Part shown: piece after piece, positions 12,739-44,556 of the stretch
Position numbering within the stretch: position 1 is the stretch's first letter
How the letters are laid out: each line of letters starts with the position of its first letter
Virus record (IMG/VR): IMGVR_UViG_3300009181_000033
Span: 124,001 to 188,000 of that record
Length of the DNA stretch: 64,000 nt
Direction: 5' to 3' (one strand)
Program-made: the position numbers and the translations under genes
The notes under the pieces: model-generated
Seen by the model: only the letters and a program-made list of their open reading frames with translations
Database searches by the model: none
Told to the model about the DNA's origin: nothing

Positions 12739-12768
12739 GTGCAAAACTAGCATCGTGTGTGGCATAAT
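12739..12768 (+). promoter_or_regulatory. Sigma70-like promoter, leaderless class
   Basis: GTGCAA-18nt-CATAAT-6nt-ATG(12775). Confidence 0.6.
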
Positions 12769-12774
12769 CGCTTC

Positions 12775-13056
12775 ATGCTAGACGAGCCGAACCTTCTTGA
12801 AAGACATGTTGTTGTTCTAAGCGGCAAAGACACAATGCTGAAGGGCAATTTTTATGAAATCCAGTGTTCTAATGGCAGCATCATTGCTGTGGACAAGAGC
12901 CTTTGGAATTCATGGACGGGTATTAGGTACATGAATGGTGAAGAATACCATGGAACAGTTTTTGTGATGGGCACACAAAAACCATATGGTGGAACGAGAA
13001 TATGCACGTGCAACACATGCCAAAAAGACTGTGATTTTAAACGTCAGTTGAATTAG
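12775..13056 (+). CDS. Hypothetical protein with C-terminal Cys cluster
   Basis: ATG at 12775; CTCNTC near the C-terminus. Confidence 0.55.
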   Translation: MLDEPNLLERHVVVLSGKDTMLKGNFYEIQCSNGSIIAVDKSLWNSWTGIRYMNGEEYHGTVFVMGTQKPYGGTRICTCNTCQKDCDFKRQLN

Positions 13057-13373
13057 CGTTTTATGGGAGGGGTTGGAATAACGTTAAAGTCATTGGTGTA
13101 AATATCGGGTCCCACGTGGGGATTTTCGGAAGTGGGAGGAACAGGACCCCAACAATCTTCTTCGTCATAAAGAGGATCCCTGAGATGACCAGCTATTTCG
13201 TCTGGTTCATCCTTGTCTTTCACGGATATTCTTCCGATTTGTTCTCTGTCAGACATGCTGGGTCCCATAGGATTACGCCCCATGGGACGACTTGGTATTG
13301 TAGTAGCACCACCGGCTTCAATTAAGATCATTTTTCTAATAATTGATCTAAATTCTGATAGCTTCATCGACAT
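13053..13373 (-). CDS. Hypothetical protein with N-terminal amphipathic tag
   Basis: MKLSEFRSIIRKMILIEA followed by an acidic, Pro-rich region. Confidence 0.65.
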   Translation of the reverse strand: MSMKLSEFRSIIRKMILIEAGGATTIPSRPMGRNPMGPSMSDREQIGRISVKDKDEPDEIAGHLRDPLYDEEDCWGPVPPTSENPHVGPDIYTNDFNVIPTPPIKR

Positions 13374-13376
13374 GTG

Positions 13377-14429
13377 TCAAAACCTCATTCCATAATAATA
13401 TCTAAAATAATTTTCTAATCTCAACTGTTCTGTTTCATTTGCCCAATAAGGCAACATTAAAAATGACGCAAGATACATTCCATTTGCGCCGGTTCCTGCC
13501 GTTGTATTATTTGAACCAATTGTTATTTGTTGGTTAATGGGAAAAACTATTGTTGGCGATACCGAAAATGTTCCCCATGTGTTAGTAACCAATGTGTGTT
13601 GAAACTTTCCATTAACGTAAAGCTCTTGTTCACTACCCAGGCCCTTTTGTGGCGCTTGATTTGGATCTAACAAACTCATTTTCATTGTAACTAAAATCCA
13701 ATCATTCAATTCCGGCAAATTTGTTGTGTCATATGAACTTGTTCGAATAGCACCACCAACATTTCCATAAACGATTAATCTCAATGTGTCTGTTGGTGTA
13801 ACTGCTTGCGTGTTAAAAATCATTCCGCCAGGCTGAGTTGAACTATCTAAGGTGAATAATGTTTTTGATGCTATTTCTTTTGATTTCAAAACCATCATCA
13901 CAGTAACTGATGGCGTTTTTGTTCCGCTTGGATTAATTGGAGCATATTCAAGCCTTGAATATCCAGAAGTGCCTGCAACCAACCATGTGGATAACCATGG
14001 TGCAACGCTAGAACCACTTGAGCCTCCAAAGTCTAAATACTTGTGAGAGCCCAATAGGCCTGTTTTTATATATGGTCTATTTGTTGCGCTACCATTTGAA
14101 CCAAGAATGACTTTTGTGCCAGAATGTGTTATTGTTGGAAAATTTGTTGCTGAAACCAAGCCTGTTGCAACCCATTTTGTTTCCAAGTCGGCTATGTCAG
14201 GAAGATAAGTGTAAGTGCCATCTTCTAGTGCTGAATCTGCATTCGCATAAATCCACGGTGTTTTAAAGCCTGAGAGTGAGGCAGGGTCCTGAATTTTGCC
14301 CTTATTTGTCGAATCTTCCTTTAACCCTCCCTTAAGCCCAGATTGCAATATTGCATAAATTGTCCCAGATTTGACACCTTGCATCAAACCTTGAGTCAGG
14401 CCTCTTTTTAATCCGCTGGGAGAGGTCAC
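13377..14429 (-). CDS. Virion protein with a probable ConA/LamG-like domain
   Basis: Beta-rich; ELYVNG and LENYFRYYYG end; GLxxG repeats at the N-terminus. Confidence 0.55.
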   Translation of the reverse strand: MTSPSGLKRGLTQGLMQGVKSGTIYAILQSGLKGGLKEDSTNKGKIQDPASLSGFKTPWIYANADSALEDGTYTYLPDIADLETKWVATGLVSATNFPTITHSGTKVILGSNGSATNRPYIKTGLLGSHKYLDFGGSSGSSVAPWLSTWLVAGTSGYSRLEYAPINPSGTKTPSVTVMMVLKSKEIASKTLFTLDSSTQPGGMIFNTQAVTPTDTLRLIVYGNVGGAIRTSSYDTTNLPELNDWILVTMKMSLLDPNQAPQKGLGSEQELYVNGKFQHTLVTNTWGTFSVSPTIVFPINQQITIGSNNTTAGTGANGMYLASFLMLPYWANETEQLRLENYFRYYYGMRF

Positions 14430-14818
14430 GCGTAAGTCTCACCAAATATCATAAAAGAACCAGTTGAATTTACCACGCTAGATAATTGAGCTGTAATGGT
14501 ATGACCTGCAGGTACGTTATAGTAAGGCACGCCATTTGCATCTTTTAATTTTTGAAACACAGCTGCTCCCGCTGAAGCTCCAAAAACATCGTTTGCTGAA
14601 GCAGCTGTTGAGGTAAATGAAAAAAATGCCTGGGCTGTTCCACCAAATGTGCCAGAGACAGTCAGTGTTGGTGTGCCTGTGTTTATAAAACAGGAAATCC
14701 CATATAATCTACGATGGTTGGTTGGGTCGGAAGTCAATATGGTTTGTGCAACGTTGTTTGCGTTGACTAACGTCCCTGAAGCAAACGGAGCTGATGTGAA
14801 TGTTAATGAAGTAGCCAT
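14426..14818 (-). CDS. Hypothetical virion protein
   Basis: 130-aa Ala/Thr/Ser-rich ORF in an operon with the fibre gene. Confidence 0.6.
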   Translation of the reverse strand: MATSLTFTSAPFASGTLVNANNVAQTILTSDPTNHRRLYGISCFINTGTPTLTVSGTFGGTAQAFFSFTSTAASANDVFGASAGAAVFQKLKDANGVPYYNVPAGHTITAQLSSVVNSTGSFMIFGETYA

Positions 14819-14832
14819 TTTTCCTCAATGTG

Positions 14833-20154: not shown

Positions 20155-20433
20155 TCAATCGACCACTCTTTCATTTTGCTGTTTTCTCCACATTATTCTT
20201 CCGCGGCTCGTATCGTAAGGTGAAACTTCTATTGCGACAAAATCACCTGGCAAAATATGGATATGATTCTGTCTTAGTTTTCCTGAAAGTGTTGTCAAAA
20301 CAACATTCCCGCCATCTATTCTTACTTTGAATAATGTTCCAGGTAGTGCCTCTTCAACAACACCATGCAGTTCCATTCTATCATCTCTTTCAAGAATTTG
20401 CTTTTGAACACTATTCTTCTTCTTCTTCGACAT
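20155..20433 (-). CDS. infA: Translation initiation factor IF-1
   Basis: GVVEEALPGTLFKV...SGKLRQNHIHILPGDFVAIEVSPYDTSRGRI; Lys-rich N-terminal extension. Confidence 0.95.
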   Translation of the reverse strand: MSKKKKNSVQKQILERDDRMELHGVVEEALPGTLFKVRIDGGNVVLTTLSGKLRQNHIHILPGDFVAIEVSPYDTSRGRIMWRKQQNERVVD

Positions 20434-20605
20434 TTTCCTTCTTTTTTCCTTCTTTCTTTTTTTCGTCACCTAAGCCTGGTGGTGTTATCTCTGTTCCACT
20501 CGAAGCGGTACCGCTTAACCCGCCAGGATAAAAGCCTGCAGATAACCTGAGATTCCTCTGAATCTCTTCACGTATCATTATTTTTAATAGAGACAAGGTT
20601 GACAT
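20411..20605 (-). CDS. Small hypothetical protein with N-terminal amphipathic tag
   Basis: MSTLSLLKIMIREEI and a charged tail. Confidence 0.5.
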   Translation of the reverse strand: MSTLSLLKIMIREEIQRNLRLSAGFYPGGLSGTASSGTEITPPGLGDEKKKEGKKKENVEEEEE

Positions 20606-21526: not shown

Positions 21527-21729
21527 GTTCTCTCCAAGAATAAATCGTCATTTACTCCATTTAGTTCGATTAAGGCGGACTCCAAATGCACCTGTAATCT
21601 ATAAGATCCTTTTTTTGTCCACATGACGACCCAAGAATCTGGTTCATCAGATTCTTGGATAATGACACCAATGTTTCTGGAATCAGGTTCCCATCTAGAA
21701 GATTTTATGACCAATGAACCAGGGTTCAT
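21511..21729 (-). CDS. Small hypothetical protein (KOW/SH3-like)
   Basis: PGSLV...IGVII...VVMW pattern; overlaps the groEL stop. Confidence 0.5.
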   Translation of the reverse strand: MNPGSLVIKSSRWEPDSRNIGVIIQESDEPDSWVVMWTKKGSYRLQVHLESALIELNGVNDDLFLERTCTSK

Positions 21730-23357
21730 CGTGAAGAATTATTTTCCTCTACAATCACAGCATCAAGAGATAAGAATGTTGAAGCAACAGAGGCTGCGTT
21801 CTTCAGGGCTGTCCTAGTTACTTTGACAGGATCTATCACGCCAGTTTCAATTAAATTTTGATATTCAAATGTAGAAGCGTTCCAGCCAGTTAGCTCACCT
21901 GAGTCTCTACGCCTATTCAATTCGTTGATTATAACGTCCTTGCTTTGTCCTGCGTTTTCAGATATTCTGCTGATCGGAGCGACACAAGCATCCAATATAA
22001 CCTTAGCCCCCAAACCGAATTGGTCAACTGAATTTATCTTTCCAGATGACAATTTTCTCCAAACCTCAAATAAAGCCATGCCTCCACCTTGAACTATTCC
22101 TTCATCGACAGCAGCTCGTGTTGCATGAAGAGCATCTTCGATGCGATACTTCCTTTCAATCATTTCTACTTCAGTTGAGCCGCCGACCTTAATCAAAGCC
22201 ACACCAGAAGAAAGTTTGGCTATTCTGGTTTTTAATTTTGTTACTTCATCAAGTGTTAAGGAAATGTCACGCAATTGTGTTTTTAGCTCCAATGTGTGTC
22301 GATCGACATTTTCCTTAGTGGAACCAGAAGAAACCAAAGTACAGTTATCTCTTGTGACGACGACCTTCTTCAATGTGCCAAGGTCAGCTAGTGTTACTTG
22401 TTGCATCTTCACACCTGTGGAGGCTGAAACTATCTTTGCATCTGTCAAGATGCTAATGTCCCTCAAAAGATCATCCTTGTGTTGGCCGTAACCTGGTGAT
22501 TTGATTGCAACAACAGGAAGCGCACCATTGACTCTGTTAACAACAAGTCCTTGAAGGGCTTCACCCTCAACGTCGTCAGCGATAATGAGAAGCGGTGTCT
22601 TTGACTGTGATATCTTTTCGAGAAGAGGAATCATTTCCCTCATGCTGCTGATTTTATGATCAGTCAGCAAAACTCTTACATCGCTATAGGCTGCGTGCAT
22701 CTTCTCTGGATTTGTCACAAAGTAAGGAGAAAGATATCCTCTCTCAAATTGCATTCCCTCGACGAGATCCAAACTGGTCGACATTCCTTTTGCGTCTTCA
22801 ACTGTGATGATTCCATCATTGCCGACTTTTGTCATTGCATCAGCAATCAATTCACCAATTTTTCTATCTCCATTTGCTGAGATAGTTGCAATTTGGGCTA
22901 TTTCTTCTGTCGACGTTAATTGCTTTGCTTCTTCTTTCAAGAGCTGCAAGGCTACATTTAAAGTTTTTTCTATGCCGTCACAAAGTTCTTCTGCATCATA
23001 GCCTGCTTCTAATAACTTCATGCCAGATTTCACCATGGCATGTGTCAAAACGGTTGACGTCGTTGTTCCATCACCTGCAATGTCATTTGTTTGTTCAGCA
23101 GCTTGTCTAATTAGCTGAGCTCCCATTCTCTCGATTGGATCTTTTAATCTAATTGACTTGCTAACTGTCACTCCGTCCTTAGTGACAATGGGTGATGAAT
23201 TTTCATCTTGTTGTATGAGAACAGTCTTGCCTTTAGGACCAAGGGTACAACCAACAGCATTAGCTACTATTTCAACACCCTTAAACAAAGATTTTCTTGC
23301 ATCAGTTGAAAAAACAACACGTGTTGTAGAAGGCAATTTAGTTTCATGTTCAATCAT
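21726..23357 (-). CDS. groEL: Chaperonin GroEL
   Basis: TLGPKG, TKDGVTV, AGDGTTT, EGMQFERGYLSPYF, GVIDPVKVTR; lacks the GGM tail. Confidence 0.97.
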   Translation of the reverse strand: MIEHETKLPSTTRVVFSTDARKSLFKGVEIVANAVGCTLGPKGKTVLIQQDENSSPIVTKDGVTVSKSIRLKDPIERMGAQLIRQAAEQTNDIAGDGTTTSTVLTHAMVKSGMKLLEAGYDAEELCDGIEKTLNVALQLLKEEAKQLTSTEEIAQIATISANGDRKIGELIADAMTKVGNDGIITVEDAKGMSTSLDLVEGMQFERGYLSPYFVTNPEKMHAAYSDVRVLLTDHKISSMREMIPLLEKISQSKTPLLIIADDVEGEALQGLVVNRVNGALPVVAIKSPGYGQHKDDLLRDISILTDAKIVSASTGVKMQQVTLADLGTLKKVVVTRDNCTLVSSGSTKENVDRHTLELKTQLRDISLTLDEVTKLKTRIAKLSSGVALIKVGGSTEVEMIERKYRIEDALHATRAAVDEGIVQGGGMALFEVWRKLSSGKINSVDQFGLGAKVILDACVAPISRISENAGQSKDVIINELNRRRDSGELTGWNASTFEYQNLIETGVIDPVKVTRTALKNAASVASTFLSLDAVIVEENNSSR

Positions 23358-23363
23358 GCCAAA

Positions 23364-23393
23364 ATTTTAATGCAAAAAATCTACAAAGTACAA
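23364..23393 (-). promoter_or_regulatory. Sigma70-like promoter, leaderless class (groEL)
   Basis: TTGTAC-18nt-TAAAAT-6nt-ATG. Confidence 0.6.
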
Positions 23394-23769: not shown

Positions 23770-24702
23770 TCACAATGGAACATTAAAGTCTCTAGACATG
23801 TTAAAGACCGCTAGATTTTTCATTTTTGCTTCGACCTCTACGTCGATTGTGTCTTCACGAAGAGACTTCAGTTGACACTCAGGAACATAGTGAATCATGT
23901 TACTGTGTTTACGTCGATCAATAAATGAGCCATTTTCTAGACCGGGTTCTGTGTTGCTGATGTGCTGCAACGGTCTAATGCCTGTTGGCCATGTTTCCTT
24001 GGTGACACTAAAAGCCTCGTCCATCGTAAGTTCACCATCATTGAAAGTGTGATGATGAGAATCAAAAACGACTGGAACACCTGTTTCCTGGTAAACAGGA
24101 AGCAGATCGACAACATTGTATCCCATCTCATCATTCTCGAGAGTGAGACGCTTTCTGACTCGATCTGGAAGTGACTTAATGTGGTTGATGAGCCTCGATG
24201 ATCGATCTCGCTTGCCACCATGAATATTGATTGCGTATTTAGGACTGTGATCGAGACCCATCATGTCGAACATCCAGCCGTGCTGGTCGAGTTCAATAAA
24301 TGCTTTTTCGACAACAGAATCTGTGTCAGAAGACAGAACACAAAATTGACCAGGATGTGTTGAAACACGAATGTCTTTCGACTTAATGAAGTCGCCAACC
24401 ATTTTTAAATAGGAAATAACTTCGGCATTGTCCCACAATGCCCGATCAACTTGATCTGCGAGAGGAAACATTGCAGATGAAATTCTAAAGAGCCTGACAC
24501 CTTGTTTGTGAATCTTAGGCAACATGGTTGAAAGATTCCTTACATTATTTACATATGTGCCCTTAATTTGGTCGGGCGTGTACTTGCCGGATTTATACCT
24601 ACCGAGCTGCAGTACACGCTCTTCCATTTCATTAATAAAATTTACTTTGCCGCTACGTGGTTTTACTTGTTCTTTGAGGTAGTGACAGCAAATGCCTAGC
24701 AT
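23770..24702 (-). CDS. uvsE: UV damage endonuclease
   Basis: FRISS, HPGQF, INIHGG, LTLEND, VFDSHHH, EVEAKMK. Confidence 0.93.
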   Translation of the reverse strand: MLGICCHYLKEQVKPRSGKVNFINEMEERVLQLGRYKSGKYTPDQIKGTYVNNVRNLSTMLPKIHKQGVRLFRISSAMFPLADQVDRALWDNAEVISYLKMVGDFIKSKDIRVSTHPGQFCVLSSDTDSVVEKAFIELDQHGWMFDMMGLDHSPKYAINIHGGKRDRSSRLINHIKSLPDRVRKRLTLENDEMGYNVVDLLPVYQETGVPVVFDSHHHTFNDGELTMDEAFSVTKETWPTGIRPLQHISNTEPGLENGSFIDRRKHSNMIHYVPECQLKSLREDTIDVEVEAKMKNLAVFNMSRDFNVPL

Positions 24703-24739
24703 AAAAATATCTTAATGCGCTGACATGCAATTTGTCACC

Positions 24740-26994: not shown

Positions 26995-27690
26995 TTATTT
27001 GGTAACAAGAATATTTGAAGTCAACATCCAGCCCCAAATCGAATCTGCCCAAAATTTATAACCGGCGGGCGTGGAATGAATCCCATCCTCAGATAAAGGC
27101 ACATCGATCGCTCTAGTGTCGTAGAATAAAGGTGCTACTTCAGAAATGTATTGACGAACAATCGATGATCTAAACAAAAGTTTTTTCTTGAATTCTGGCG
27201 GTCCGACCCAAACCAACTTGGCTCCAGAGGCTTCCACCGACTCAACAAACTTTAAATAGACTTCCTTATTTCTCTCCAACCATTCCTGATTAGCGACCGA
27301 ATCGTTGGTTCCCAATGAAACAACAACGAGAGATGGTTTGTATTTTGTCAAATCGTGGGCAATCAATGAAATCCAACGCTTGGTGGTCGAACCCAAAATA
27401 GCGTGCAAATAAGCTTCGTAATTGTTACCCCTCAGAATTTTCTCCAAATGGGGACCAAAACCCATCCCCAAAGAGTCGCCTACGATTAAGACTCTTTTGC
27501 CGCTAGGAATTAGTGGAAAAACTTTTTTTGGCAACACATCTTCGCTTACAACATCAGGCGATATCGGTGATGAAGGATCGATTGATGAATCGATTACTAC
27601 AGTAGAGTCCTCCCACTCGGCTGGAAATTGTGACTGGTGATAACCAGCAGTCATTCCAAGAATCATCATAGAAAATTTCTTCACTTCCAT
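26995..27690 (-). CDS. SGNH/GDSL hydrolase, probably exported
   Basis: IVGDSL, SLGTND, DGIH. Confidence 0.85.
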   Translation of the reverse strand: MEVKKFSMMILGMTAGYHQSQFPAEWEDSTVVIDSSIDPSSPISPDVVSEDVLPKKVFPLIPSGKRVLIVGDSLGMGFGPHLEKILRGNNYEAYLHAILGSTTKRWISLIAHDLTKYKPSLVVVSLGTNDSVANQEWLERNKEVYLKFVESVEASGAKLVWVGPPEFKKKLLFRSSIVRQYISEVAPLFYDTRAIDVPLSEDGIHSTPAGYKFWADSIWGWMLTSNILVTK

Positions 27691-28232
27691 TGCCCTCTGT
27701 AAAATGCCATTGCAACAGTAGCTGCAGAACCAACGTTTAAAGATCTTACTGCTCCCCATTGCGGAATGTATACAACTTTGCTGGCTTTCTTGAGTGACTG
27801 CGGAGACACACCAATCGACTCCTGTCCGAGAATTAGAATCGTTTTCTTTGACCATGAATGTTCGTAAATGCTGGTTGCACCTGGTACATTGTCAAAGACG
27901 ACAACCTCGTGCTCAGGATGTTGTTCGATAACCTCATCAATTGATGGCGAAAAACCAAGATGTTCGTAGTTTTGCATCCCACATGCACCACGCCTATCCC
28001 ACTTCCTTCGACCAACGATGAACACCTTTTCGCAAAGGAAGGCATTTGATGATCTGATCACAGTTGAAATGTTAAAGTCGTTACCAAAATTCTCTGCAGC
28101 TACAACGAGCTCTGAACGATTCTTGTCCTGGTCAGCAATGATAGCCTCATGGTTCCAGTATTTGTAATGATCAACAACATTCCTGTGATCAAACGGCTCA
28201 GCTGGCCAATTGTGGTTGACGAGATTGCTCAT
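27681..28232 (-). CDS. TrmH/SpoU-family (SPOUT) RNA methyltransferase
   Basis: NISTVIRSS, LILGQESIG, IPQWGAVRSLNVGSAA. Confidence 0.9.
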   Translation of the reverse strand: MSNLVNHNWPAEPFDHRNVVDHYKYWNHEAIIADQDKNRSELVVAAENFGNDFNISTVIRSSNAFLCEKVFIVGRRKWDRRGACGMQNYEHLGFSPSIDEVIEQHPEHEVVVFDNVPGATSIYEHSWSKKTILILGQESIGVSPQSLKKASKVVYIPQWGAVRSLNVGSAATVAMAFYRGQWK

Positions 28233-28314
28233 GTAATAATAGTAAACAACTTAACAAGATATTTGCACTCACAAAAACAAATAACTCTTCTTGGATTATA
28301 GTTAATAATTGAGT

Positions 28315-29490: not shown

Positions 29491-29503
29491 ACAGGAGTGC
29501 AAA

Positions 29504-30823: not shown

Positions 30824-30859
30824 AAACCAAATATATATTTTATAATATCAAGAGGAACA

Positions 30860-35464: not shown

Positions 35465-36514
35465 TCAATTTCCATTTAATAGCTTTGCAGCTTTCTTCAA
35501 ATCTTCGCTGTTTTTTATTGGTAAGAACCTAGTGTGCCTGGGGATTTCAACAAATGAAGTTTGAAATGTGTATGTTAGATCCTGCAAAAGCCTCTCATAG
35601 TGAACCACAAGGTTTCCATGCACGTTCTTTTTTACCCTGTGCCATGACCATTTTATTGTGTTAAAATCCAAATTTGCATCCACTATCATGCTATTTGTAT
35701 TCAGCCAATTAAATTGAATGGGATCATACTTCCCAAAAATCCTAAATTCTTCCACTATCTGATTAACCCCATCAACACTGCAAAGTATTCCACCGGAATC
35801 TGTTGGTATTTTTTCAACCACTTCACACGTGATGGGCTTTGCATTCTTTATGTGCCATCCAATCAAAAGAGGATCCAGCGAGGCCAGTACATTGCTTGCA
35901 TTAACAACACAGATATATTTGCCACCCTGTTTGATAAAATCATGAAGCAATCCAGATTCTTTTAAGGCAGGAACAACATCACCATGTCCACAAGAACTTA
36001 AATAAGGCTGTTGATTTCTTAGGCAAAGAAGATTATCAGGTGTTAATCCAATTGTCTGATATTGTTTAAAGGTTTTTATCTCTCCCTTAAAAGCCAAGGA
36101 AGAAAGATGGGATTTTATTTCCTCATCATTCGCAGGGTCTGTCATAATCCAAACATGGCGACTTGGCACCGATTGCATTATTTTCATTGCCAAAAGCGAA
36201 ATATTCAAATCAGGCAGCTTTTTTAGAGAATCAAAATTCCCTCCTGACAAAATACAATATGCAACCTGTCCATCCTCTATGGCCTTCAAGCCTAAATCAA
36301 AAATATCTTTTTCAATATCTTCGTATTTTGCAACATCATCTTGATGAACAACCACAGGATCATCGACCGAATAATCCTGTGGATTTGTCAACATCCTCAA
36401 TAATGATTGCAATCTCAAGCCATTGTCTCTGTCTATGGACTGAATTGTTTCAAATGAAACTTTTTCAAGTTGTAGCTGTAGGCTTTTCAAGAAACCTGGT
36501 GTGCGAGCGAACAT
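35465..36514 (-). CDS. UDPGP-family UTP--sugar-1-phosphate uridylyltransferase
   Basis: ILSGG, WIMT, CGHGDV, NVLASLDP, GGILC, NTNS, RFLPIK; the GTR loop looks shortened. Confidence 0.78.
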   Translation of the reverse strand: MFARTPGFLKSLQLQLEKVSFETIQSIDRDNGLRLQSLLRMLTNPQDYSVDDPVVVHQDDVAKYEDIEKDIFDLGLKAIEDGQVAYCILSGGNFDSLKKLPDLNISLLAMKIMQSVPSRHVWIMTDPANDEEIKSHLSSLAFKGEIKTFKQYQTIGLTPDNLLCLRNQQPYLSSCGHGDVVPALKESGLLHDFIKQGGKYICVVNASNVLASLDPLLIGWHIKNAKPITCEVVEKIPTDSGGILCSVDGVNQIVEEFRIFGKYDPIQFNWLNTNSMIVDANLDFNTIKWSWHRVKKNVHGNLVVHYERLLQDLTYTFQTSFVEIPRHTRFLPIKNSEDLKKAAKLLNGN

Positions 36515-36545
36515 GCAATAAACATAACACTATTTTAAAGAAAGT

Positions 36546-36920
36546 TCACATGTCTAAGGCATTTTCCTCATCCTTTAGAATTCTTGCCTCAAGTTCCTTT
36601 AGCGACTTAGAAAACCTCTTTGTCAAAGCCTTCTTCGCTATTCTTTTTGCACTTTCAGCATCTCCTCGGGTCATTTGCAATATTTTTTCAAATTTCAAAT
36701 TTACTATTCTTTTTGCAGAATTCAATATATCCGATGGAATTTCAAAACCATAAGAAAATTCTATTTCTTCAGCCCACTCATCAACTATTGCATCAGAAGG
36801 AGCCTCAGATCCAAAAAAGGATTTGATTTTTTCCCACCAGCTCTTTTGGCTCTTCTCCTGGGGTTATAGTTCGCTAGCCAAATATTTTGATATAAATTCT
36901 CTTAAAATTTTTTCATTCAT
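36546..36920 (-). pseudogene. 124-codon gene, absent from the ORF track, interrupted by an in-frame TAA at 36864-36866
   Basis: MNEKILREFISKYLASEL*PQEKSQKSWWEKIKSFFGSEAPSDAIVDEW...KDEENALDM*; start overlaps the upstream stop (TAATG) and the gene fills the gap exactly. Confidence 0.7.
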
Positions 36921-37923: not shown

Positions 37924-38340
37924 ATGAAAATTGTTAAAGAGATATTTAAGGCCATAGTTCAAGAAGGTATCGAACTCGAACTGAATGGGGAGCTTGACAA
38001 TTACGAACTGAATACTGAAGCCATAGAAAATGAATACTATAGCGAAATCCTAAGAGAAGCCGAATACAAAGGAAGAGATGTTCCGTTGGGAAAGCCTATG
38101 AGGGGAGACGTAAAAAAATACAAAGTTTATGTAAAAGACCCTAAAACTGGCAACGTCAAGAAAGTAAATTTCGGAGATCCAAACGCCGAAATAAAGAGAG
38201 ACGACCCAGAACGTCGCAAGAATTTCAGGGCCAGGCATGGATGCGGGACGAAAAGAGCTTCCAATAGAACGAAAGCTGCCTATTGGTCGTGTCGACTATG
38301 GTCGAGGAAACCTGTTTCTAAAATCATGAAGGGGGAATAA
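37924..38340 (+). CDS. Conserved phage protein (DUF6321-like basic domain) with an acidic N-terminal leader
   Basis: LREAEYKG, KKYKVYVKDPKTGNVKKVNFGD, RRKNFRARHGC, AYWSC. Confidence 0.7.
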   Translation: MKIVKEIFKAIVQEGIELELNGELDNYELNTEAIENEYYSEILREAEYKGRDVPLGKPMRGDVKKYKVYVKDPKTGNVKKVNFGDPNAEIKRDDPERRKNFRARHGCGTKRASNRTKAAYWSCRLWSRKPVSKIMKGE

Positions 38341-39169
38341 CGTCACCAAACAAATGATCAAACGTGGCAATAAACTTTTGCCATGTGCCATCCTTTGTCA
38401 TGGACTGAAAACCATAAGAGTCAAAAAGATCTTTTACTTTGGACCAGTTGCGCTCTGGAGAAGAAGATGTCATTTCGATCCTATCTTCGTCCGACCAAGT
38501 CATAAACTTAATCAAGTCATAGTTACGTTCGAACTGTACAGCATGCTCTGGATTGGCTAGGAAAGAAGCCAACTTGCCAGGATCCATGCATAGCTCCTCG
38601 GCTGTCTTGTCGCCGATGCCGGGGATGCCAGGAATATTGTCCGAAGTATCACCGCGCAAGGCCTTCCAGGTCACATAATCGTACTCCTCAGGAGCCTCTA
38701 GATATTTCTTTTTAATTGGATTCCATACTTTTACGTGTGGATATTCCTGAACTACCTGAGTGAAATCCGTGTCATTAGAAACGACAATCCAAGGAGCGGC
38801 CGTTGAACTGCAATTGATGAGATTGTAGATGGTGTCGTCGCACTCAGAAGTGGGGTGACGAACAACCGAAACAGGAAACACGGTGGAGAGAAGATCAACA
38901 ATCTGATCTTTTTGCTTGAAGAACCTTTGCAGCTCCTCGTACTTCGGATCATCCTTTTCAACCTTGCGTGTTGCCTTGTACTCTGCCAGCTTTTCGTATC
39001 GATTGACCGGTCGACCCTCGAGGACAACATAGATTCGACTAGGCTTAAATTCATCGATCGTCGACTTGAACTGACGGAAGAAGTTGAAAACAACAGGAGC
39101 AGGACCCATCTGAAAACCACTGCGAGCCCTATGACACTGATTCATGAAGTCCAAACAGAGGATTGTCAT
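38324..39169 (-). CDS. 5'-3' exonuclease/flap endonuclease (T4 RNase H-like)
   Basis: CLDFMN, YKATR, ECDD, SNDTDF, LRGDTSDNIPGIPGIGDKTA. Confidence 0.93.
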   Translation of the reverse strand: MTILCLDFMNQCHRARSGFQMGPAPVVFNFFRQFKSTIDEFKPSRIYVVLEGRPVNRYEKLAEYKATRKVEKDDPKYEELQRFFKQKDQIVDLLSTVFPVSVVRHPTSECDDTIYNLINCSSTAAPWIVVSNDTDFTQVVQEYPHVKVWNPIKKKYLEAPEEYDYVTWKALRGDTSDNIPGIPGIGDKTAEELCMDPGKLASFLANPEHAVQFERNYDLIKFMTWSDEDRIEMTSSSPERNWSKVKDLFDSYGFQSMTKDGTWQKFIATFDHLFGDVIPPS

Positions 39170-39227
39170 ATTCTTAACTTACCTCACCAATAATCAAGGT
39201 TGCACTTTTTATTGTATATTTTTTGCC

Positions 39228-40148: not shown

Positions 40149-40775
40149 AGATTCGAGCTTCTCGACCCCCGCGATAACCTTCTGCTGAACATCGCTTTCA
40201 ATCGCCTTAATATCTTCAACGGTGAGGATGCTGCCTGTCTTCCTATCGTGCAAGATGATTGCGGATTTCTCAACCGCTGAAGAATAACGACCAAGGAGAC
40301 CATCGGCTGCCCTTTCCGACAAGACTCCATAATTGCTAATCTTCATGTTTGACAATAGCACGGTGTCCTGTCTGGCATCCAGGATCTCGGATGCCGGAAC
40401 AATCAAATCCTCTTTCTTTACTCCACGGAGAAGTGCTCCGGAGCAATGATCCCACAGAAGAGACTTGGTGATTTTCTTGGACCACGGATGCTCGCAGTGC
40501 GGATTTTTGGCCGGTGTCATTGTCACCTCAGAAGATCTCCAGCGACATCGATCAAATCTCTTGGAAGGACCACGATGGCCATACTCAGCCGGCCCTTGAA
40601 CGAGGGCAATGACAGCACGCTTATAAGCCTCCGTCGCCGCTGTCTCTGTAACGTTGGATGGTCTGTTGAGGTGTGACTCAATTAAGCACAACCAAATCCA
40701 GGTTGTTGACCTGAGAACATCGTAATATTCTTCAGTTCGGTAATCGACCCAGTCGCTATCGGAAAGCAATTTCAT
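40125..40775 (-). CDS. Hypothetical protein
   Basis: 216-aa ORF coupled to the PolX gene; the CEHP motif is only weakly HNH-like. Confidence 0.55.
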   Translation of the reverse strand: MKLLSDSDWVDYRTEEYYDVLRSTTWIWLCLIESHLNRPSNVTETAATEAYKRAVIALVQGPAEYGHRGPSKRFDRCRWRSSEVTMTPAKNPHCEHPWSKKITKSLLWDHCSGALLRGVKKEDLIVPASEILDARQDTVLLSNMKISNYGVLSERAADGLLGRYSSAVEKSAIILHDRKTGSILTVEDIKAIESDVQQKVIAGVEKLESLGKIKEK

Positions 40776-41356
40776 TAATTCCTCACGTACTTCTTAATAA
40801 CATTCTTGGACGTACGAATCTCGGGTGGGACGAAATCCATCTCGAGGATGTCGAAAAAATCCTGCTCCTCGGGCACCCACAGCTGTTCTCCTGTTGGCAT
40901 CGTCGGCATGCAATCAGTCATGCGGCCGCCACCTGACAATTTCTTGAATCGACCAAAAATTCCTGGCACAAAACCATTGAACGAGTTGCCTTCGGCATCA
41001 GACCCGGAGCCTGTGCGCATCATGTATAGCCCGCCCCAGTTCTCAGGGGAAGCCATGAATAGATCAAGGTTCATGCCTTCACTGAGACGAACACGAATGT
41101 ACTTGGCCGCAAGCTTGGGGATCCAAGGCACAGTACCTGGAACACCTGGCTTAATATGCTGACCGACCTCTGTTAGGAGACGGATTAGCTTTTCACGATC
41201 ATCGGAGATGCCTACCAGCTCGATGTCGCCTACGATTGGCTTTTGTCTGCGAATAGAACCTGCAATCTCCACTCTAGTCATTGCAGACGAAATATGGTTC
41301 TTCACCTTAATGGCGATGGCTTGGGCTTCGACCAGATCGATTTTTCCGATTCCCAT
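40775..41356 (-). CDS. Minimal DNA polymerase X/beta-family nucleotidyltransferase
   Basis: IAGSIRR, GDIE, LDLF, RTGS, EEQDFF...VPPEIR; no lyase or PHP domain. Confidence 0.85.
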   Translation of the reverse strand: MGIGKIDLVEAQAIAIKVKNHISSAMTRVEIAGSIRRQKPIVGDIELVGISDDREKLIRLLTEVGQHIKPGVPGTVPWIPKLAAKYIRVRLSEGMNLDLFMASPENWGGLYMMRTGSGSDAEGNSFNGFVPGIFGRFKKLSGGGRMTDCMPTMPTGEQLWVPEEQDFFDILEMDFVPPEIRTSKNVIKKYVRN

Positions 41357-41412
41357 GTATTAAACATACACAGCTCAGTGACGGGTTTGCACCGGTGGCA
41401 TATAATTAATTC

Positions 41413-42324
41413 ATGCACAAAAAAATTTCGAGTCAAAATCTAAGAAAATTGATCAGAGAAATCATTGAGGAAGAAACGGCAATTCCCGGTGATGCCCCTT
41501 CTGAAAACCAAGTTCATCTTTTTGACTTTGATGATACACTTGCTGTAACACAGGATCCCACAGCTGTAATGCTCTACAATGATGAAATCCCTGCACATAA
41601 ATCGGCAGACGAAGTCATAAATTGGCTGACACAATTTAAAATATCTGATGATGATCTAATAAACCCAGGCATTGCGCAAATACCGCAGAGGGGTGGACAC
41701 GCTGCATATATTAATTCGGCAGCTTTGGCTAAAATACAGACAGCCTATAATAGAAGCCAACAAAAGGTCAGCGGAATAAGTGAACCCAAACAAGGTGAAT
41801 CTATATTAATGGACTTTACACCATGTGCATCAACAAACCTCGATGCAGCCAAACCAATAGATTCAACTATTGAAAAAATGAAGAGAATGCAAGATGTAGG
41901 AGCAACAACAGGTGTAGTGACAGCAAGAAAAGAAAAAGGAAGTGGAATCGATCTTCATGGACACAAGGTTGATGCCACCAACAAAGAAGACATAATTAAA
42001 TTTCTTGCACAAAATGGCGTAAGCCCCAGTGCTGGCGTCATGGGTGTCTCTGGACAAAATAAAGGAAATTTCATTGCGAAATATTTTGCCGGCGACAAGA
42101 ACACAAAGGAAATACACTTTTACGATGATATGCCTAAAAACACTTCAGAAGTTGAACAAGCGCTAGCAGAGAAAACTCCTTCGGAATTATTCATATATGG
42201 ACCAGGTGAATTCGACAAAGGAGAAGCAAATCCAAATGTTCCTTCAAAGAGTCATCCTGCTAAAAAGCAAAAGTTCGAAAATTTTGATTTATCGAGATGG
42301 AATAAATTGGCCGGACTAAAATGA
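41413..42324 (+). CDS. HAD-superfamily phosphatase-like protein with N-terminal tag
   Basis: FDFDDTL, VTAR, K, FYDD; N-terminal NLRKLIREIIEE; C-terminal RWNKLAGL. Confidence 0.75.
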   Translation: MHKKISSQNLRKLIREIIEEETAIPGDAPSENQVHLFDFDDTLAVTQDPTAVMLYNDEIPAHKSADEVINWLTQFKISDDDLINPGIAQIPQRGGHAAYINSAALAKIQTAYNRSQQKVSGISEPKQGESILMDFTPCASTNLDAAKPIDSTIEKMKRMQDVGATTGVVTARKEKGSGIDLHGHKVDATNKEDIIKFLAQNGVSPSAGVMGVSGQNKGNFIAKYFAGDKNTKEIHFYDDMPKNTSEVEQALAEKTPSELFIYGPGEFDKGEANPNVPSKSHPAKKQKFENFDLSRWNKLAGLK

Positions 42325-42346: not shown

Positions 42347-42348
42347 AT

Positions 42349-42783
42349 TTATATTGAAGGCAATTTTATCTTTGCAACTGTTCCATCTGACATCATCACT
42401 GTAGTGACATCTTCAGGCAATTCCTTTGTAATTGTGGTGTTAGGTTCAAAATCAGGAAGATCCTCTATTGACTGTGGTTCTGAAATTTCGGTCAAAGAAT
42501 ACCATTCTTTGGATTTTGTAACTGCAATATCCATTAGTCTATTAACATGCTTGATCGCTCTATCAATTAATGTTTTTCTAGCCTTGTCAGAAGAATCAAA
42601 TATTTCTCCGTCGACTTGATCCAGCATTACAGTCGATGTTCTATCTGATCCGCCTTGCAACAGGTATTGCACTTCTTCGCCTTTAAGCGTTTTCTTGGTA
42701 ATTATTTCTATTACCTGCATCGGATAAATTTGATTCTTTTTGTTTAGAACAATGAAAAGAACTTGTCCAATTGAGTATCTCAC
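42349..42783 (-). CDS. Hypothetical protein
   Basis: 144-aa ORF (YSIGQVLF). Confidence 0.6.
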   Translation of the reverse strand: MRYSIGQVLFIVLNKKNQIYPMQVIEIITKKTLKGEEVQYLLQGGSDRTSTVMLDQVDGEIFDSSDKARKTLIDRAIKHVNRLMDIAVTKSKEWYSLTEISEPQSIEDLPDFEPNTTITKELPEDVTTVMMSDGTVAKIKLPSI

Positions 42784-43142
42784 TTTTGTTCTCCAGCGTC
42801 ATTGCCCAAAAAACTTGAACTTTGTTCATCTTCGTCGTCTGATGGCTCAGAAGCCAATTGAAAAACACTGATAGGAGGAGGTCCAGAGGGTGCCACAATG
42901 AAATCTGGTGCATCCTCATTCATGGGAATGCTGGCCAATTCACAGGCGTCAGAAATCTTGTTCCACAAGAGCGTTTCTGTCATTGATCTATTTTCAACTT
43001 CAGCAAGAGATTGACTTAGTGTTTTCTTGCCTTCCGGAGGCAGAACCACACCGAATAAATCCCTAAGGTGAACTAGTTCAAACTTTGTTAGCCTTAGTTC
43101 GAAAGTTTTTCTTTTCTTAAGGAAAGGTTGTTTATCACTCAT
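42780..43142 (-). CDS. Hypothetical protein
   Basis: 120-aa ORF in operon. Confidence 0.6.
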   Translation of the reverse strand: MSDKQPFLKKRKTFELRLTKFELVHLRDLFGVVLPPEGKKTLSQSLAEVENRSMTETLLWNKISDACELASIPMNEDAPDFIVAPSGPPPISVFQLASEPSDDEDEQSSSFLGNDAGEQK

Positions 43143-43156
43143 GTTCTATTCTCACT

Positions 43157-43444
43157 TCAAGAAGTTGGATCAATTGCTTCCAGGAATAAATCAAATGTAT
43201 CTCGGTGTGCAACACCTTGCTGAATCTTAACAACCTTAAGAGCGGCTTGCAACGTTTTCATGTCAAGTCGATCCTGATATTCTTCAATGATTTCTTTTCT
43301 ATCTGTTTTTAGGAGCTCGATCTCATTATCAACTGTTTCAATCTTTCCAATGAACTCCTTCACAAGACCTCTAAGGGTATTGATCTCATCAGGCTGCATA
43401 TCAGCGGTATTGTATTGCTTCTTGGGTGGTGCTTTCTTTGGCAT
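43157..43444 (-). CDS. DsbA/GapR-like double-stranded DNA-binding protein
   Basis: FIGKIETVDNEIELLKTDRKEIIEE...LDMKTLQAALK helical pattern. Confidence 0.6.
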   Translation of the reverse strand: MPKKAPPKKQYNTADMQPDEINTLRGLVKEFIGKIETVDNEIELLKTDRKEIIEEYQDRLDMKTLQAALKVVKIQQGVAHRDTFDLFLEAIDPTS

Positions 43445-43476
43445 GTTGATATTCTAAACCGCCAAGTTTGAAAAGT

Positions 43477-44556
43477 TCAAAGCGCCTTTATTTTTTGTAT
43501 TGTCGACCTGTAGTCTTTAACATATTGAGCATCTTCAGGGACGCCTTGCTTCAAGACTTCCTGCACTTTGTCTTCGAGTGATTTTATGTAAAATTGCTTC
43601 ATAGAAGCACGAATAGTTTTCATAATGCTCTTTTCTGCTTCTTGTTTTTCTTTGCCTTCAAGCTCAGAAAGCTTCTTAATTTCAGGTATTTCCTTCTTGT
43701 TTTTCTTCATCAAATTCTGAAGATCCTGGGGAGATTTTGCATTCTTTAAAACGCCTTCTGCTTGATTGTAAATTTGATCCAAGCTTTTTCTATAAATTTC
43801 CGTGGCGGTCTTCTTCATTTTTTCAGCCTCGGGGCTTGAATAGACTTTCGTCAAAAATTTTGGATTCTTCATCAATTTTTGTGGCGTAAATCCACCTTTT
43901 TGATTTTTTTCATTGGAGTCATCCTCTGTGATTTGTTGAGATTCTCCCCACAAATCACTTGGGTTACGACTCTTGCCACCTGATTCCCGAGAAGTCTTTT
44001 TAGGAGCCTTGGCACCTTTGTTGCCTAACATCCACCTTCCTGTTTTTTGCAACTTTTCTTTTGTGGCGTCATATAATTGGTCAGAAAATCCACCGGTTGT
44101 TGCACTCAAAAGACTCTTTGCGACTTTGGGTGCAGCCTTTGCCGTAAAGGCACCCATGACAAGTGCTGGTGAAGCCATAAAGGCTAGCGCCACAGCGTCT
44201 CCCTTAAACGCCTCATCATTTCTTTTATAAACTTCTGAATAATCATTTCTTATCTTGTTGATCTCTTCTTTTTCTTCATCAAAAACGCCGGCATAATCGG
44301 CCCTCAACATGGGATTGAGGGTCGTCACAATTGTTCCCCAAACAACTTTTACTAGAGTTTTGGCACGCGTTGTAAGCTCCTTCGTTTTACCTATAGCAGT
44401 TTGCACTGCATCAACAAATGGAGATCCAAATACCTTAAAAAGATCCCCTTGATAAGAAGAACCCATCATTCCTGCTGTATCCATTGGGCCATAGTCATCT
44501 TCTTTTAAGATGTGTTGAACATATTCCTTCAACAATATTTCGCCAGATTTTTTCAT
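43477..44556 (-). CDS. Hypothetical helical protein with N-terminal tag
   Basis: LLKEYVQHILKED; ATATTTA 5 nt upstream. Confidence 0.7.
   Translation of the reverse strand: MKKSGEILLKEYVQHILKEDDYGPMDTAGMMGSSYQGDLFKVFGSPFVDAVQTAIGKTKELTTRAKTLVKVVWGTIVTTLNPMLRADYAGVFDEEKEEINKIRNDYSEVYKRNDEAFKGDAVALAFMASPALVMGAFTAKAAPKVAKSLLSATTGGFSDQLYDATKEKLQKTGRWMLGNKGAKAPKKTSRESGGKSRNPSDLWGESQQITEDDSNEKNQKGGFTPQKLMKNPKFLTKVYSSPEAEKMKKTATEIYRKSLDQIYNQAEGVLKNAKSPQDLQNLMKKNKKEIPEIKKLSELEGKEKQEAEKSIMKTIRASMKQFYIKSLEDKVQEVLKQGVPEDAQYVKDYRSTIQKIKAL

What the first reader, a model, noticed from the sequence alone, without database searches (positions are those of the whole stretch)
12739..43480. Eight sigma70-like promoters with the -10 box exactly 6 nt before ATG: a leaderless-mRNA regulon
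Seen (-35/spacer/-10, each followed by 6 nt then ATG): 12775 GTGCAA-18-CATAAT; groEL TTGTAC-18-TAAAAT; uvsE GTGACA-18-TAAGAT; SPOUT methyltransferase GTGCAA-18-TACTAT; UDPGP GTGAAC-17-TATGTT; flap nuclease GTGCAA-18-TAAGTT; PolX GTGCAA-18-TATGTT; DsbA-like TTGAAC-18-TAGAAT. There is no room for a Shine-Dalgarno site in the 6-nt gap. Established: this geometry puts the transcription start at or next to the ATG. Inference: early/middle repair and chaperone genes are translated as leaderless mRNAs. That could be a host-lineage signature, or a way to keep translating when canonical initiation is shut down. The phage also encodes IF-1.
Basis: partly seen in the sequence, partly recalled or inferred. 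Interest (0 to 1): 0.7.

Follow-up and report, generated by a model that had tools for sequence, protein, structure and literature searches.

The report
Phage promoters that start transcription at ATG
An uncultured 298-kb freshwater phage and its relatives place a conserved, phage-specific promoter exactly 6 bases before the ATG of dozens of genes, so these messages probably have no leader and no ribosome-binding site; the principle is known, but not in this form or on this scale in a giant phage.

Summary
All eight sites are in the window.

Genome-wide (297,894 bp, complete, freshwater metagenome), a matrix built only from the -35 to -10 stretch finds 42 sites against 0-2 in shuffles. Thirty of them have ATG or GTG exactly 6 nt after the -10 hexamer. 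The base before the ATG is a pyrimidine in 28 of 29.

The core element is cGGTGCAAAGT-N15-TAnnnT-N6-ATG, with G at -14. It is not a canonical TTGACA promoter. Most copies lie outside the window, at 56-110 kb, before small genes.

Related phages keep the geometry while the spacers diverge. Seven of seven PolX-like genes keep it, and 38 of 56 matrix hits in relatives do. IMG/VR holds 224 distinct core sites.

Tail sheath, major head, RNR and DnaB genes use AGGAG-type Shine-Dalgarno sites, so canonical initiation is not abandoned.

No RNA data could be listed, and the host is unknown. The promoter is absent from the 128 bacterial genomes tested. The factor that reads the GTGCAAAGT box is unresolved. 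The phage encodes a sigma factor split into two genes, which is one candidate. IF-1 is present, but its link to the promoters is speculative.

The parts
12739..12777 (+). Strong class promoter: GTGCAA-18-CATAAT-6-ATG, driving a 93-aa ORF (12775-13056) of unknown function
   Evidence: Regex hit. Matrix score 22.3 bits, top 1.6e-5 of window positions. Sequence read.
23355..23393 (-). TTGTAC-18-TAAAAT-6-ATG before groEL (21726-23357). Good -10, non-class -35.
   Evidence: Cpn60, E 6e-73. Low class score. GroEL genes in relatives carry TAGAAT-6-ATG, TATAAT-6-ATG, TAAAAT-6-ATG and TAATAT-7-ATG.
24700..24738 (-). GTGACA-18-TAAGAT-6-ATG before the UV-damage endonuclease gene uvdE (23770-24702)
   Evidence: UvdE, E 1e-53. 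Score 5.7 bits, top 1.5e-4. One orthologue has GTGCAA-18-TATCAT-6-ATG; another has the same promoter with a ~10-nt GAGGTGA leader.
28230..28268 (-). GTGCAA-18-TACTAT-6-ATG before a SpoU/SPOUT methyltransferase gene (27681-28232)
   Evidence: (SpoU_methylase, E 6e-24). A 36%-identical homologue in G001 has GTGCAA-18-TATGAT-6-ATG.
36512..36549 (-). GTGAAC-17-TATGTT-6-ATG before a UDPGP-family nucleotidyltransferase gene (35465-36514). Weak class match.
   Evidence: Homologues have TATAAT at 7 and 9 nt from the ATG.
39167..39205 (-). Strong class promoter: GTGCAA-18-TAAGTT-6-ATG before the 5'-3' exonuclease (flap nuclease) gene (38324-39169)
   Evidence: (18.6 bits). Six orthologues keep -35/-10 with ATG 5-7 nt downstream and diverged spacers. 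Two have AAGGAG Shine-Dalgarno sites instead.
41354..41392 (-). Strong class promoter: GTGCAA-18-TATGTT-6-ATG before a 193-aa PolX-like nucleotidyltransferase gene (40775-41356)
   Evidence: 23.9 bits. Weak PolX match. All seven orthologues found keep (G/A)TG(C/A)A(A/T)-18-TAnnnT-6-ATG with unrelated spacers.
43442..43480 (-). TTGAAC-18-TAGAAT-6-ATG before a 95-aa ORF (43157-43444). 'DsbA-like' is not confirmed.
   Evidence: Orthologues: TTGAAC-17-TAGTGT-6-ATG, GTGAAC-18-TATTTT-6-ATG, one at 7 nt, one SD-led.
41379..41415 (+). It is divergent from, and overlaps, the PolX-like promoter within a 56-bp intergenic gap.
20155..20433 (-). Phage IF-1 (infA) gene. Likely start is the ATG at 20433, preceded by a purine-rich AAGGAAA stretch, so the gene is not leaderless. 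The protein has a Lys-rich N-terminal extension.
   Evidence: (TIGR00008, E 2e-24).

Best explanation
These are real promoters of one clade-specific class, read by a sigma-70-family holoenzyme built on the host core RNA polymerase.

Anatomy: an upstream box cGGTGCAAAGT in the -35 position; 18 bp between GTGCAA and the hexamer; G at -14 (a partial extended -10); a TAnnnT hexamer at -12 to -7; and a 6-nt A-rich discriminator ending in a pyrimidine. This geometry places the transcription start on the A of the ATG, so the mRNA begins with AUG and has no leader and no Shine-Dalgarno site.

Translation (inferred from established work on leaderless mRNAs): the ribosome recognises the 5'-terminal AUG, with initiator tRNA and IF2.

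Numbers: about 32 of the ~40 genuine promoters of the class in this genome are leaderless, counting sites with the ATG at 5 or 7 nt. About six have leaders carrying GGAG-type sites.

Distribution: the class is concentrated before small genes at 56-110 kb, probably the early or host-takeover set. It extends to repair, chaperone and nucleotide-sugar genes in the window. Structural and replication genes use ordinary Shine-Dalgarno sites.

Shown: the sequence architecture, its enrichment and its conservation. Inferred: the start site, the leaderless translation and the timing.

Unresolved: which factor reads the GTGCAAAGT box. It could be the host primary sigma, or the phage's own sigma, which is split into a 270-aa r1.2-r3 protein and a 92-aa r4.2-only protein.
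For: - Enrichment: 9 window hits against 1.2 expected. The distance spike at 6 nt is 38 against ~6, and 31 against ~2 with an ORF.
- A matrix blind to the ATG finds 42 sites against 0-2 in shuffles. 29 have ATG and 1 has GTG exactly at +1.
- Position -1 is C or T in 28 of 29, and +1 is A in 28 of 29. G at -14 occurs in 23 of 29.
- The first 25-40 nt of these ORFs are less structured than inner windows of the same genes (p 0.007 and 0.0008).
- In-frame stops sit just upstream of the ATGs.
- Conservation, exact pattern against reversed control: G001 33 vs 0, G002 10 vs 0, G003 5 vs 0.
- Blind matrix on 140 kb of relatives: 56 hits, 38 with ATG plus ORF at 6 nt.
- Orthologue promoters keep the boxes and spacing while the spacers diverge: PolX-like 7 of 7, flap 6.
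- IMG/VR with the 18-nt spacer: 91 stretches and 224 distinct cores, 194 with ATG at 6 nt. The same pattern with a 17-nt spacer gives only 10 single hits.
- No RNAP beta-subunit or T7-type RNAP gene was detected. The T7-type search had no positive control, so it is weak evidence. A sigma gene is present.
- SD-led tail sheath, major head, RNR and DnaB genes show the dual mode.
- The same -10-adjacent-ORF geometry (TANNNT 6-7 bp upstream) is experimentally validated as a leaderless promoter in Deinococcus (PMC12340547).
Against: - No transcript 5' ends are available; no RNA run was listed.
- No terminator enrichment between the closely spaced early genes. Read-through transcripts must therefore also exist, in which these ATGs are internal.
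- About half of the promoters contain GAGG at -16 to -13, 12 nt from the ATG. This could act as a weak Shine-Dalgarno site in such transcripts.
- Five of the eight window sites are weak matches to the class.
- The upstream box matches TTGACA at only 3 of 6 positions. It is absent from every bacterial genome tested, so the recognising factor is unknown.
Confidence: 0.75

Rival explanations
1. The promoters are read by the phage's own split sigma, not by the host sigma. The 270-aa r1.2-r3 protein would read the G-14/TAnnnT element. The free-standing 92-aa r4.2 helix-turn-helix protein would read the GTGCAAAGT box. The class would then be a phage-private, probably middle, transcription channel coupled to SD-independent translation.
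For: - The box is longer and better conserved than a normal -35 hexamer. It is conserved across relatives with 55-73% protein identity.
- It is absent from 128 bacterial genomes apart from mis-binned phage contigs.
- Canonical TTGACA/TATAAT promoters are not enriched in the phage.
- The sigma ends after r4.1 in this phage and in G002 and G003.
- The 92-aa protein matches the next segment of the same PHROG sigma profile: positions 695-723, after 477-690 for the sigma.
- Its recognition helix TRMRICQIEK is identical in G002, although the two proteins are only 52% identical overall.
- Minimal single-HTH sigmas alongside RpoD-like sigmas are known in group 2 jumbo phages (PMC7824862).
Against: - The sigma gene lies downstream of a class promoter (genome 43616). 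This creates a bootstrap problem unless the protein is injected or another promoter serves it.
- Arrays of small genes are typical of early genes, which are normally read by the host holoenzyme.
- No binding or transcription data exist.
Confidence: 0.35
2. Host-lineage signature. The host belongs to a lineage where -10-adjacent ORFs are the norm, such as Deinococcota or Actinomycetota, and the phage simply follows host usage with the host primary sigma.
For: - TANNNT 6-7 bp before about one third of ORFs is documented in Deinococcus-Thermus (PMC12340547). Thermus phage phiYS40 makes leaderless middle/late mRNAs (PMC3594737).
Against: - The host is unknown. The only leads are mis-binned phage contigs in two Bdellovibrionota MAGs and one Caulobacteraceae-labelled protein.
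- 200 kb from each of the two Bdellovibrionota MAGs shows no clear TANNNT-N6-ATG excess: 4.4% vs 2.1% and 2.8% vs 1.1%.
- Deinococcus-type sites usually lack a strong -35, whereas this class has a long conserved box.
- Only about 10-15% of this phage's genes are of this type, and they cluster by region.
Confidence: 0.25
3. The motif is not the operative start signal. The genes are expressed mainly from polycistronic read-through transcripts, and the G-rich GAGGTA stretch acts as a long-spaced Shine-Dalgarno site. The TAnnnT/box conservation would then serve something else, such as a regulator site.
For: 21 of 29 sites have an SD-like 4-mer in the 24 nt upstream, against 23% of random 24-mers. 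14 of these start at -16. There is no terminator enrichment.
Against: - The invariant features are those of promoters, not SD sites: T-12, A-11, T-7, G-14, an 18-bp spacer to an upstream box, and Y-1/R+1.
- Shifting the spacer by 1 nt abolishes the signal in IMG/VR.
- The spacing to the ATG is fixed to +/-1 nt, tighter than SD spacing.
- The same promoter class drives six leadered genes that carry proper GGAG sites 6-10 nt from their starts.
- Orthologues that lose the -10 gain a real AAGGAG site at normal spacing.
Confidence: 0.07

Closest known systems
Thermus thermophilus phage phiYS40 middle/late genes (Sevostyanova et al. 2007, as summarised in PMC3594737 and cited in PMC12340547)
   Same: A lytic phase with no RNAP of its own, where many transcripts start at the start codon from a -10-like element. 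Translation of leaderless phage mRNAs is tied to initiation-factor balance.
   Different: phiYS40's leaderless promoters have only a -10-like element and are middle/late (from my own knowledge of the paper, which was not held in the library). Here the class has a long conserved upstream box and marks small, probably early, genes, while structural genes are SD-led. phiYS40 is reported to alter host IF2/IF3 levels. This phage encodes IF-1, with no shown link.
-10 motif adjacent to ORFs in Deinococcus-Thermus (PMC12340547; D. deserti, PMC4007540) and leaderless genes of Actinobacteria (PMC4633059, PMC3160421)
   Same: TANNNT 6-7 bp upstream of ATG/GTG, acting as the promoter -10, and giving leaderless mRNAs alongside GGAG-led genes.
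   Different: Those are cellular, genome-wide usages, mostly with a weak or absent -35. This is a phage clade with its own 9-11-bp upstream box, and its host lineage is unknown.
Phage lambda cI mRNA from P_RM (Shean & Gottesman 1992, cited in PMC12340547; own knowledge)
   Same: A phage mRNA that begins with the AUG of the ORF and is translated without a Shine-Dalgarno site.
   Different: Lambda has a single regulatory transcript. Here there are ~30 genes per genome and a dedicated promoter class.
T4 middle promoters (MotA box plus sigma-70 -10; own knowledge) and T4 gp55/gp33 late transcription; minimal single-HTH sigmas of group 2 jumbo phages (PMC7824862)
   Same: A phage-specific upstream element replaces the canonical -35 while a normal -10 is kept. 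Promoter recognition is divided between separate small phage proteins.
   Different: No AsiA or MotA homologue was found here. T4 transcripts are leadered. Whether the split sigma reads this class is untested.
Jumbo phages with mapped transcription starts: AR9 (PMC5312081) and phiKZ (PMC8244752)
   Same: Giant phages with phage-specific promoter motifs.
   Different: [quoted passage not shown] This phage has no detectable RNAP core gene and is predicted to make many leaderless transcripts.

Membership tests
Sigma-70-family bipartite promoter | -10 hexamer TAnnnT (T-12, A-11, T-7) | tested here: met
   Required in the seed pattern. It stays near-invariant in the blind matrix hits and in relatives.
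Sigma-70-family bipartite promoter | -35 hexamer resembling TTGACA, 17+/-1 bp upstream | tested here: not met
   The box is GTGCAA(AGT), 3 of 6 matches, with an 18-bp spacer. Canonical consensus scans are not enriched: 12 vs 9.9 and 82 vs 61-81. The spacing is met. The sequence is not.
Sigma-70-family bipartite promoter | Extended -10 (T-15, G-14) | tested here: inconclusive
   G-14 in 23 of 29, but T-15 in only 13 of 29. G-16 and G-13 are also enriched.
Sigma-70-family bipartite promoter | Start about 7 nt after the hexamer, purine at +1 and pyrimidine at -1 | tested here: inconclusive
   The sequence fits: A at +1 in 28 of 29, C/T at -1 in 28 of 29. No 5'-end data exist.
Leaderless mRNA genes | Primary 5' end at, or within a few nt of, the start codon | not testable with these tools
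   No RNA run was listed. All contigs carrying the gene are DNA assemblies.
Leaderless mRNA genes | The promoter -10 occupies the place of the SD, 6-7 nt before the start codon, which is predominantly AUG | tested here: met
   Distance spike at 6 nt. 29 ATG and 1 GTG among 42 blind hits.
Leaderless mRNA genes | The ATG at +1 is the real translation start | tested here: met
   In-frame stops lie 1-6 codons upstream. Pfam domains begin near the N-termini. Orthologue protein similarity begins at this ATG. The 5' ends have low structure. No proteomic data exist.
phiYS40-type phage leaderless programme | Leaderless class has only a -10-like element and belongs to middle/late genes | tested here: not met
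   A conserved upstream box is present. Tail sheath and major head genes are SD-led. Timing itself is untested.
Deinococcota/Actinomycetota host usage | The host genome shows the same -10-adjacent-ORF signal | tested here: inconclusive
   The host is unknown. Two candidate MAGs show no clear signal. The promoter is absent from 128 bacterial genomes of the groups that could be reached.
T4-type sigma appropriation (AsiA/MotA) | AsiA and MotA homologues | tested here: not met
   No match to PF09010 or PF09158 at E<=1.

The most novel reading that the evidence does not exclude
This widespread clade of freshwater giant myophages runs an orthogonal expression channel. A phage sigma factor split into two separately encoded parts (r1.2-r3, and a zinc-ribbon-like r4.2 domain) would read a private GTGCAAAGT/-10 promoter. 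That promoter is positioned to the base so that every transcript begins with AUG. A whole set of takeover, repair and chaperone genes would then be independent of both the host sigma's -35 specificity and the SD/anti-SD interaction, possibly aided by the phage IF-1.
Probability: 0.2. Interest if true: 0.75.

Novelty: new variant of a known kind. Interest (0 to 1): 0.5.

Why it matters
If the 5' ends are confirmed, this would be, among the papers searched here, the first giant-phage clade with a systematic leaderless gene set. The two jumbo phages with mapped starts, AR9 and phiKZ, have none.

It has three practical consequences:
- Standard gene callers that look for Shine-Dalgarno sites will misplace starts or miss small genes in such phages.
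- The promoter-to-ATG geometry gives base-exact start-codon annotation for hundreds of unknown small proteins in IMG/VR contigs.
- The very specific 9-11-bp box flags mis-binned phage contigs in MAGs. It did so here for a Bdellovibrionota MAG.

The class also offers a compact test system for two open questions. How are non-canonical -35 boxes read: by the host sigma, a split phage sigma, or an activator? And why would a phage segregate leaderless and SD-led translation between gene classes?

Tried and rejected
- RNA evidence: a search of any kind of run found only DNA metagenomes, and an RNA-only search listed none. Read laying was therefore not used. The contigs that carry the groEL gene are all DNA assemblies.
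- Close cultured relatives: megablast found nothing. tblastn with GroEL, sigma and flap nuclease gave at most 46%, 38% and 33% identity, so no host can be taken from isolates.
- Host via PrkA: the best 'bacterial' hits are contigs in Bdellovibrionota and Halobacteriovorax MAGs. They proved to be phage contigs, with the same promoters or the phage gene order. The rest of those MAGs, and 123 further genomes of that phylum, lack the promoter. The first two MAGs also lack a clear TANNNT-N6-ATG signal. The host lead is weak and is not used as evidence.
- Atlas look-alikes of UvdE and sigma gave inconsistent taxa: Bacillota, Gemmatimonadota, Pseudomonadota, Actinomycetota.
- Canonical sigma-70 and intrinsic-terminator scans showed no enrichment.
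- Phage RNAP (beta-subunit or T7-type), AsiA and MotA: none found. The T7 search had no positive control.
- The 95-aa ORF beside the sigma gene looked like region 4 by eye but has no supporting match. The real r4.2 protein lies at genome 286.8 kb.
- My first IMG/VR pattern had a 17-nt spacer by mistake. I kept it as a spacing control.
- Two of the 42 matrix hits are probably false: a terminator-like hairpin at genome 39936, and an intragenic site at 101254 with a poor -10.
- My home-made gene caller misses many ORFs of 70 aa or less, so the LL/SD/other table is only indicative.

Full report
**What the window is.** The window is bases 124,001-188,000 of a single 297,894-bp virus record with direct terminal repeats, rated complete. 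It comes from a freshwater metagenome. It encodes a tail sheath and a major head protein, so it is a giant myovirus. It has no close cultured relative.

**Check of the observation.** It also finds one chance hit that opens an 8-aa ORF. Sixty Markov shuffles of the window give 1.2 +/- 1.3 hits, maximum 5, against 9 observed.
- Pfam confirms GroEL, UvdE, a SpoU methylase, a UDPGP-family enzyme and a 5'-3' exonuclease.
- The 'PolX' gene is a 193-aa protein with only a weak PolX match.
- 'DsbA-like' is unconfirmed.
- IF-1 is real. It sits behind a purine-rich AAGGAAA stretch and is not itself leaderless.

Among 338 -35/-10 cores in the genome, the distance from the hexamer to the next ATG has one sharp spike at 6 nt. 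The count is 38 against about 6 at other distances. It is 31 against about 2 when an ORF of at least 40 aa must follow.

I then built a weight matrix from the -35 to -10 stretch only, with no information from the ATG, and refined it by iteration. It finds 42 sites of at least 14 bits, against 0-2 in shuffled genomes.
- At the position 6 nt after the hexamer, 29 sites have ATG and one has GTG.
- Two more have the ATG at 5 or 7 nt. Two have 4-5-nt leaders.
- About six have leaders of 20-45 nt that carry GGAG-type sites at normal spacing.
- Two look like false positives.

The consensus is cGGTGCAAAGT-N15-TAnnnT-(A/T)(G/A)AA(C/T)C-ATG. The base before the ATG is a pyrimidine in 28 of 29, and the first base is A in 28 of 29. 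That is the usual preference at a bacterial start site. G at -14 is present in 23 of 29.

Because the hexamer often reads TAA or TAG in frame, an in-frame stop lies just upstream of most of these ATGs. The ORFs therefore cannot begin earlier. The first 25-40 nt of the ORFs are less structured than inner windows of the same genes.

**Where the class lies.** Most copies are outside the window. They lie at 56-75 kb and 92-110.5 kb, before arrays of small genes. Nearly every gene there has its own promoter.
- Recognisable products include an ATP-dependent DNA ligase, a DUF2201 metallopeptidase/VWA protein, a pentapeptide-repeat protein and an AT-hook protein. The rest are unknown.
- Inside the window only three of the eight sites are strong members: 12739, 39205 and 41392. 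uvdE and the SPOUT gene are intermediate. groEL, UDPGP and the 95-aa gene have good -10 hexamers at 6 nt but other -35 hexamers.
- I found one further site, GTGACG-17-TATAAT-6-ATG at 41379-41415(+). It overlaps the PolX-like promoter back to back within a 56-bp intergenic gap. Such an arrangement is possible only if both genes lack leaders.

**Comparative evidence.** Relatives were found in IMG/VR through the GroEL and flap-nuclease proteins, at 42-73% identity.
- The exact pattern GTGCAA-N18-TANNNT-N6-ATG occurs 33, 10 and 5 times in three related records. The reversed control pattern occurs 0 times.
- On 140 kb of unselected sequence from these relatives, the blind matrix gives 56 hits. Of these, 38 have an ATG with an ORF exactly 6 nt downstream.
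- Orthologue by orthologue, the boxes and distances are kept while the spacers are unrelated. All seven PolX-like genes keep the arrangement. Six flap-nuclease genes keep it, with ATG at 5-7 nt.
- Instructive exceptions exist. Two flap orthologues have lost the -10 and carry AAGGAG at normal Shine-Dalgarno spacing. One uvdE orthologue keeps the promoter but has a ~10-nt leader with GAGGTGA. The two designs are thus interchangeable in evolution, as expected if both are start signals.
- An IMG/VR-wide scan for GTGCAAAGT-N13-GNTANNNT-N5-YATG returns 91 stretches on about 45 contigs, many with 10-17 copies. The same pattern with the spacer shortened by one base returns only 10 single hits. In the fetched stretches, 194 of 224 distinct cores have their first ATG at 6 nt, and 172 of those open at least 40 aa. 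This count is biased upward by the selection, but the spacer control is not.

**What it is not.**
- Canonical TTGACA/TATAAT promoters are not enriched in the phage. GTGCAA shares only 3 of 6 positions with TTGACA.
- Terminators are not enriched in the early region.
- No RNAP beta-subunit or T7-type RNAP gene and no AsiA/MotA homologue was detected.
- Tail sheath, major head, RNR and DnaB genes are preceded by AGGAG or GGAG at normal spacing. The phage therefore uses both initiation modes. The idea that leaderless genes serve a state in which canonical initiation is shut down has no support.

**Who reads the box?** The phage encodes a group-1/2-like sigma of 270 aa with regions 1.2-3 that stops after region 4.1. 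The relatives G002 and G003 have the same truncated form.

A separate 92-aa gene 245 kb away encodes a Cys-rich segment followed by a region-4.2 helix-turn-helix. On the same PHROG sigma profile the two proteins match consecutive segments, positions 477-690 and 695-723. The recognition helix of the small protein, TRMRICQIEK, is identical in G002, although the proteins are only 52% identical overall.

RpoD-like sigmas alongside minimal single-HTH sigmas are already described for group 2 jumbo phages (PMC7824862). This split sigma is a plausible reader of the conserved GTGCAAAGT box. The box is absent from 128 bacterial genomes, apart from mis-binned phage contigs.

Against this, the sigma gene itself lies downstream of a class promoter, and arrays of small genes are usually early genes read by the host holoenzyme. 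I leave this unresolved: about 0.35 for the phage sigma and somewhat more for the host sigma or another activator.

**Host.** The host is unknown. PrkA is 85% and 71% identical to genes on contigs of two Bdellovibrionota MAGs. Those contigs are phage contigs, carrying the same promoters or the phage gene order. One GroEL relative is labelled Caulobacteraceae. Neither MAG shows a -10-adjacent-ATG signal in 200 kb. The 'host-lineage signature' reading therefore cannot be confirmed. I give it 0.25.

**Comparison with what is known.**
- TANNNT 6-7 bp before ORFs is a validated leaderless promoter arrangement in Deinococcus-Thermus (PMC12340547, PMC4007540). It is common in Actinobacteria (PMC4633059, PMC3160421).
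- Thermus phage phiYS40 makes leaderless middle/late mRNAs (PMC3594737). Lambda cI is the classical single case.
- The two jumbo phages with mapped starts have no leaderless transcripts (PMC5312081, PMC8244752).
- The survey of huge phages reports IF1 and sigma genes but does not mention leaderless genes (PMC7162821).

The present case works like the known leaderless promoters but differs in three ways. It has a long phage-specific upstream box. It is restricted to one gene class, with SD-led structural genes. And it is conserved across a widespread uncultured giant-phage clade. I rate it a new variant of a known kind.

**Caveats.** Everything about 5' ends, timing and translation mode is inference from sequence. 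About half of the promoters contain GAGG 12 nt before the ATG. This could give weak Shine-Dalgarno function on read-through transcripts. I consider that a minor, possibly additional, mode (0.07 as the main explanation).

Noticed in passing
outside the window: genome 41656-42468 (-) = L001:1060-1872, and genome 286831-287109 (+) = L003:1327-1605: The sigma factor is split into two genes 245 kb apart: a 270-aa r1.2-r3 protein ending after r4.1, and a 92-aa Cys-rich protein carrying the r4.2 helix-turn-helix. They match consecutive parts of one PHROG sigma profile. Both are conserved in relative G002, with an identical recognition helix.
   Followed up: partly
window 28309-32794 (+): The phage carries a complete PrkA / DUF444 (YeaH) / SpoVR (YcgB) stress-kinase module, in the order DUF444-SpoVR-PrkA. 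The bacterial loci seen here had prkA followed by DUF444. The Pfam matches are very strong (E 1e-105 to 1e-137).
   Followed up: partly
L112, L118-L127 (G006 contigs C9, C72); L113, L133 (G007): Two public Bdellovibrionota MAGs contain contigs that are relatives of this phage. In G006 they carry the same GTGCAA-ATG promoters. In G007 they share the phage gene order and collinear glycosyltransferase genes. This is either MAG contamination or a weak host hint.
   Followed up: partly
genome-wide, e.g. window 23702 (-); genome 241123 (-) before the tail sheath gene: The heptamer ATACTTA is about tenfold enriched in intergenic DNA (15 vs 1.5 expected). It lies 2-58 nt upstream of about 15 genes, at no fixed distance from the ATG. 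It may be a second (late?) promoter element.
   Followed up: no
window 41357-41412: A 56-bp gap between divergent ATGs holds two overlapping, oppositely oriented promoters, each ending 6 nt before its ATG.
   Followed up: yes
window 20155-20469 (-): The phage IF-1 has a Lys-rich N-terminal extension (MSKKKKNSVQKQ...) ahead of the conserved S1-like domain. The longer GTG-initiated frame is probably not used.
   Followed up: partly
genome 68245-74431 (-) = L150:12246-18432: Four small paralogous genes begin MKPG(D/N)(M/L)V, each with its own class promoter. Part of the promoter similarity in the early region may reflect gene duplication.
   Followed up: no
I did not find the 6-nt promoter geometry before these.
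   Followed up: no
genome 39916-39960 (-): A GC-rich hairpin (GGGACGTTGGTGCAACGTCCC followed by a T run) contains GTGCAA and scored as a weak matrix hit. It looks like an intrinsic terminator, not a promoter.
   Followed up: no
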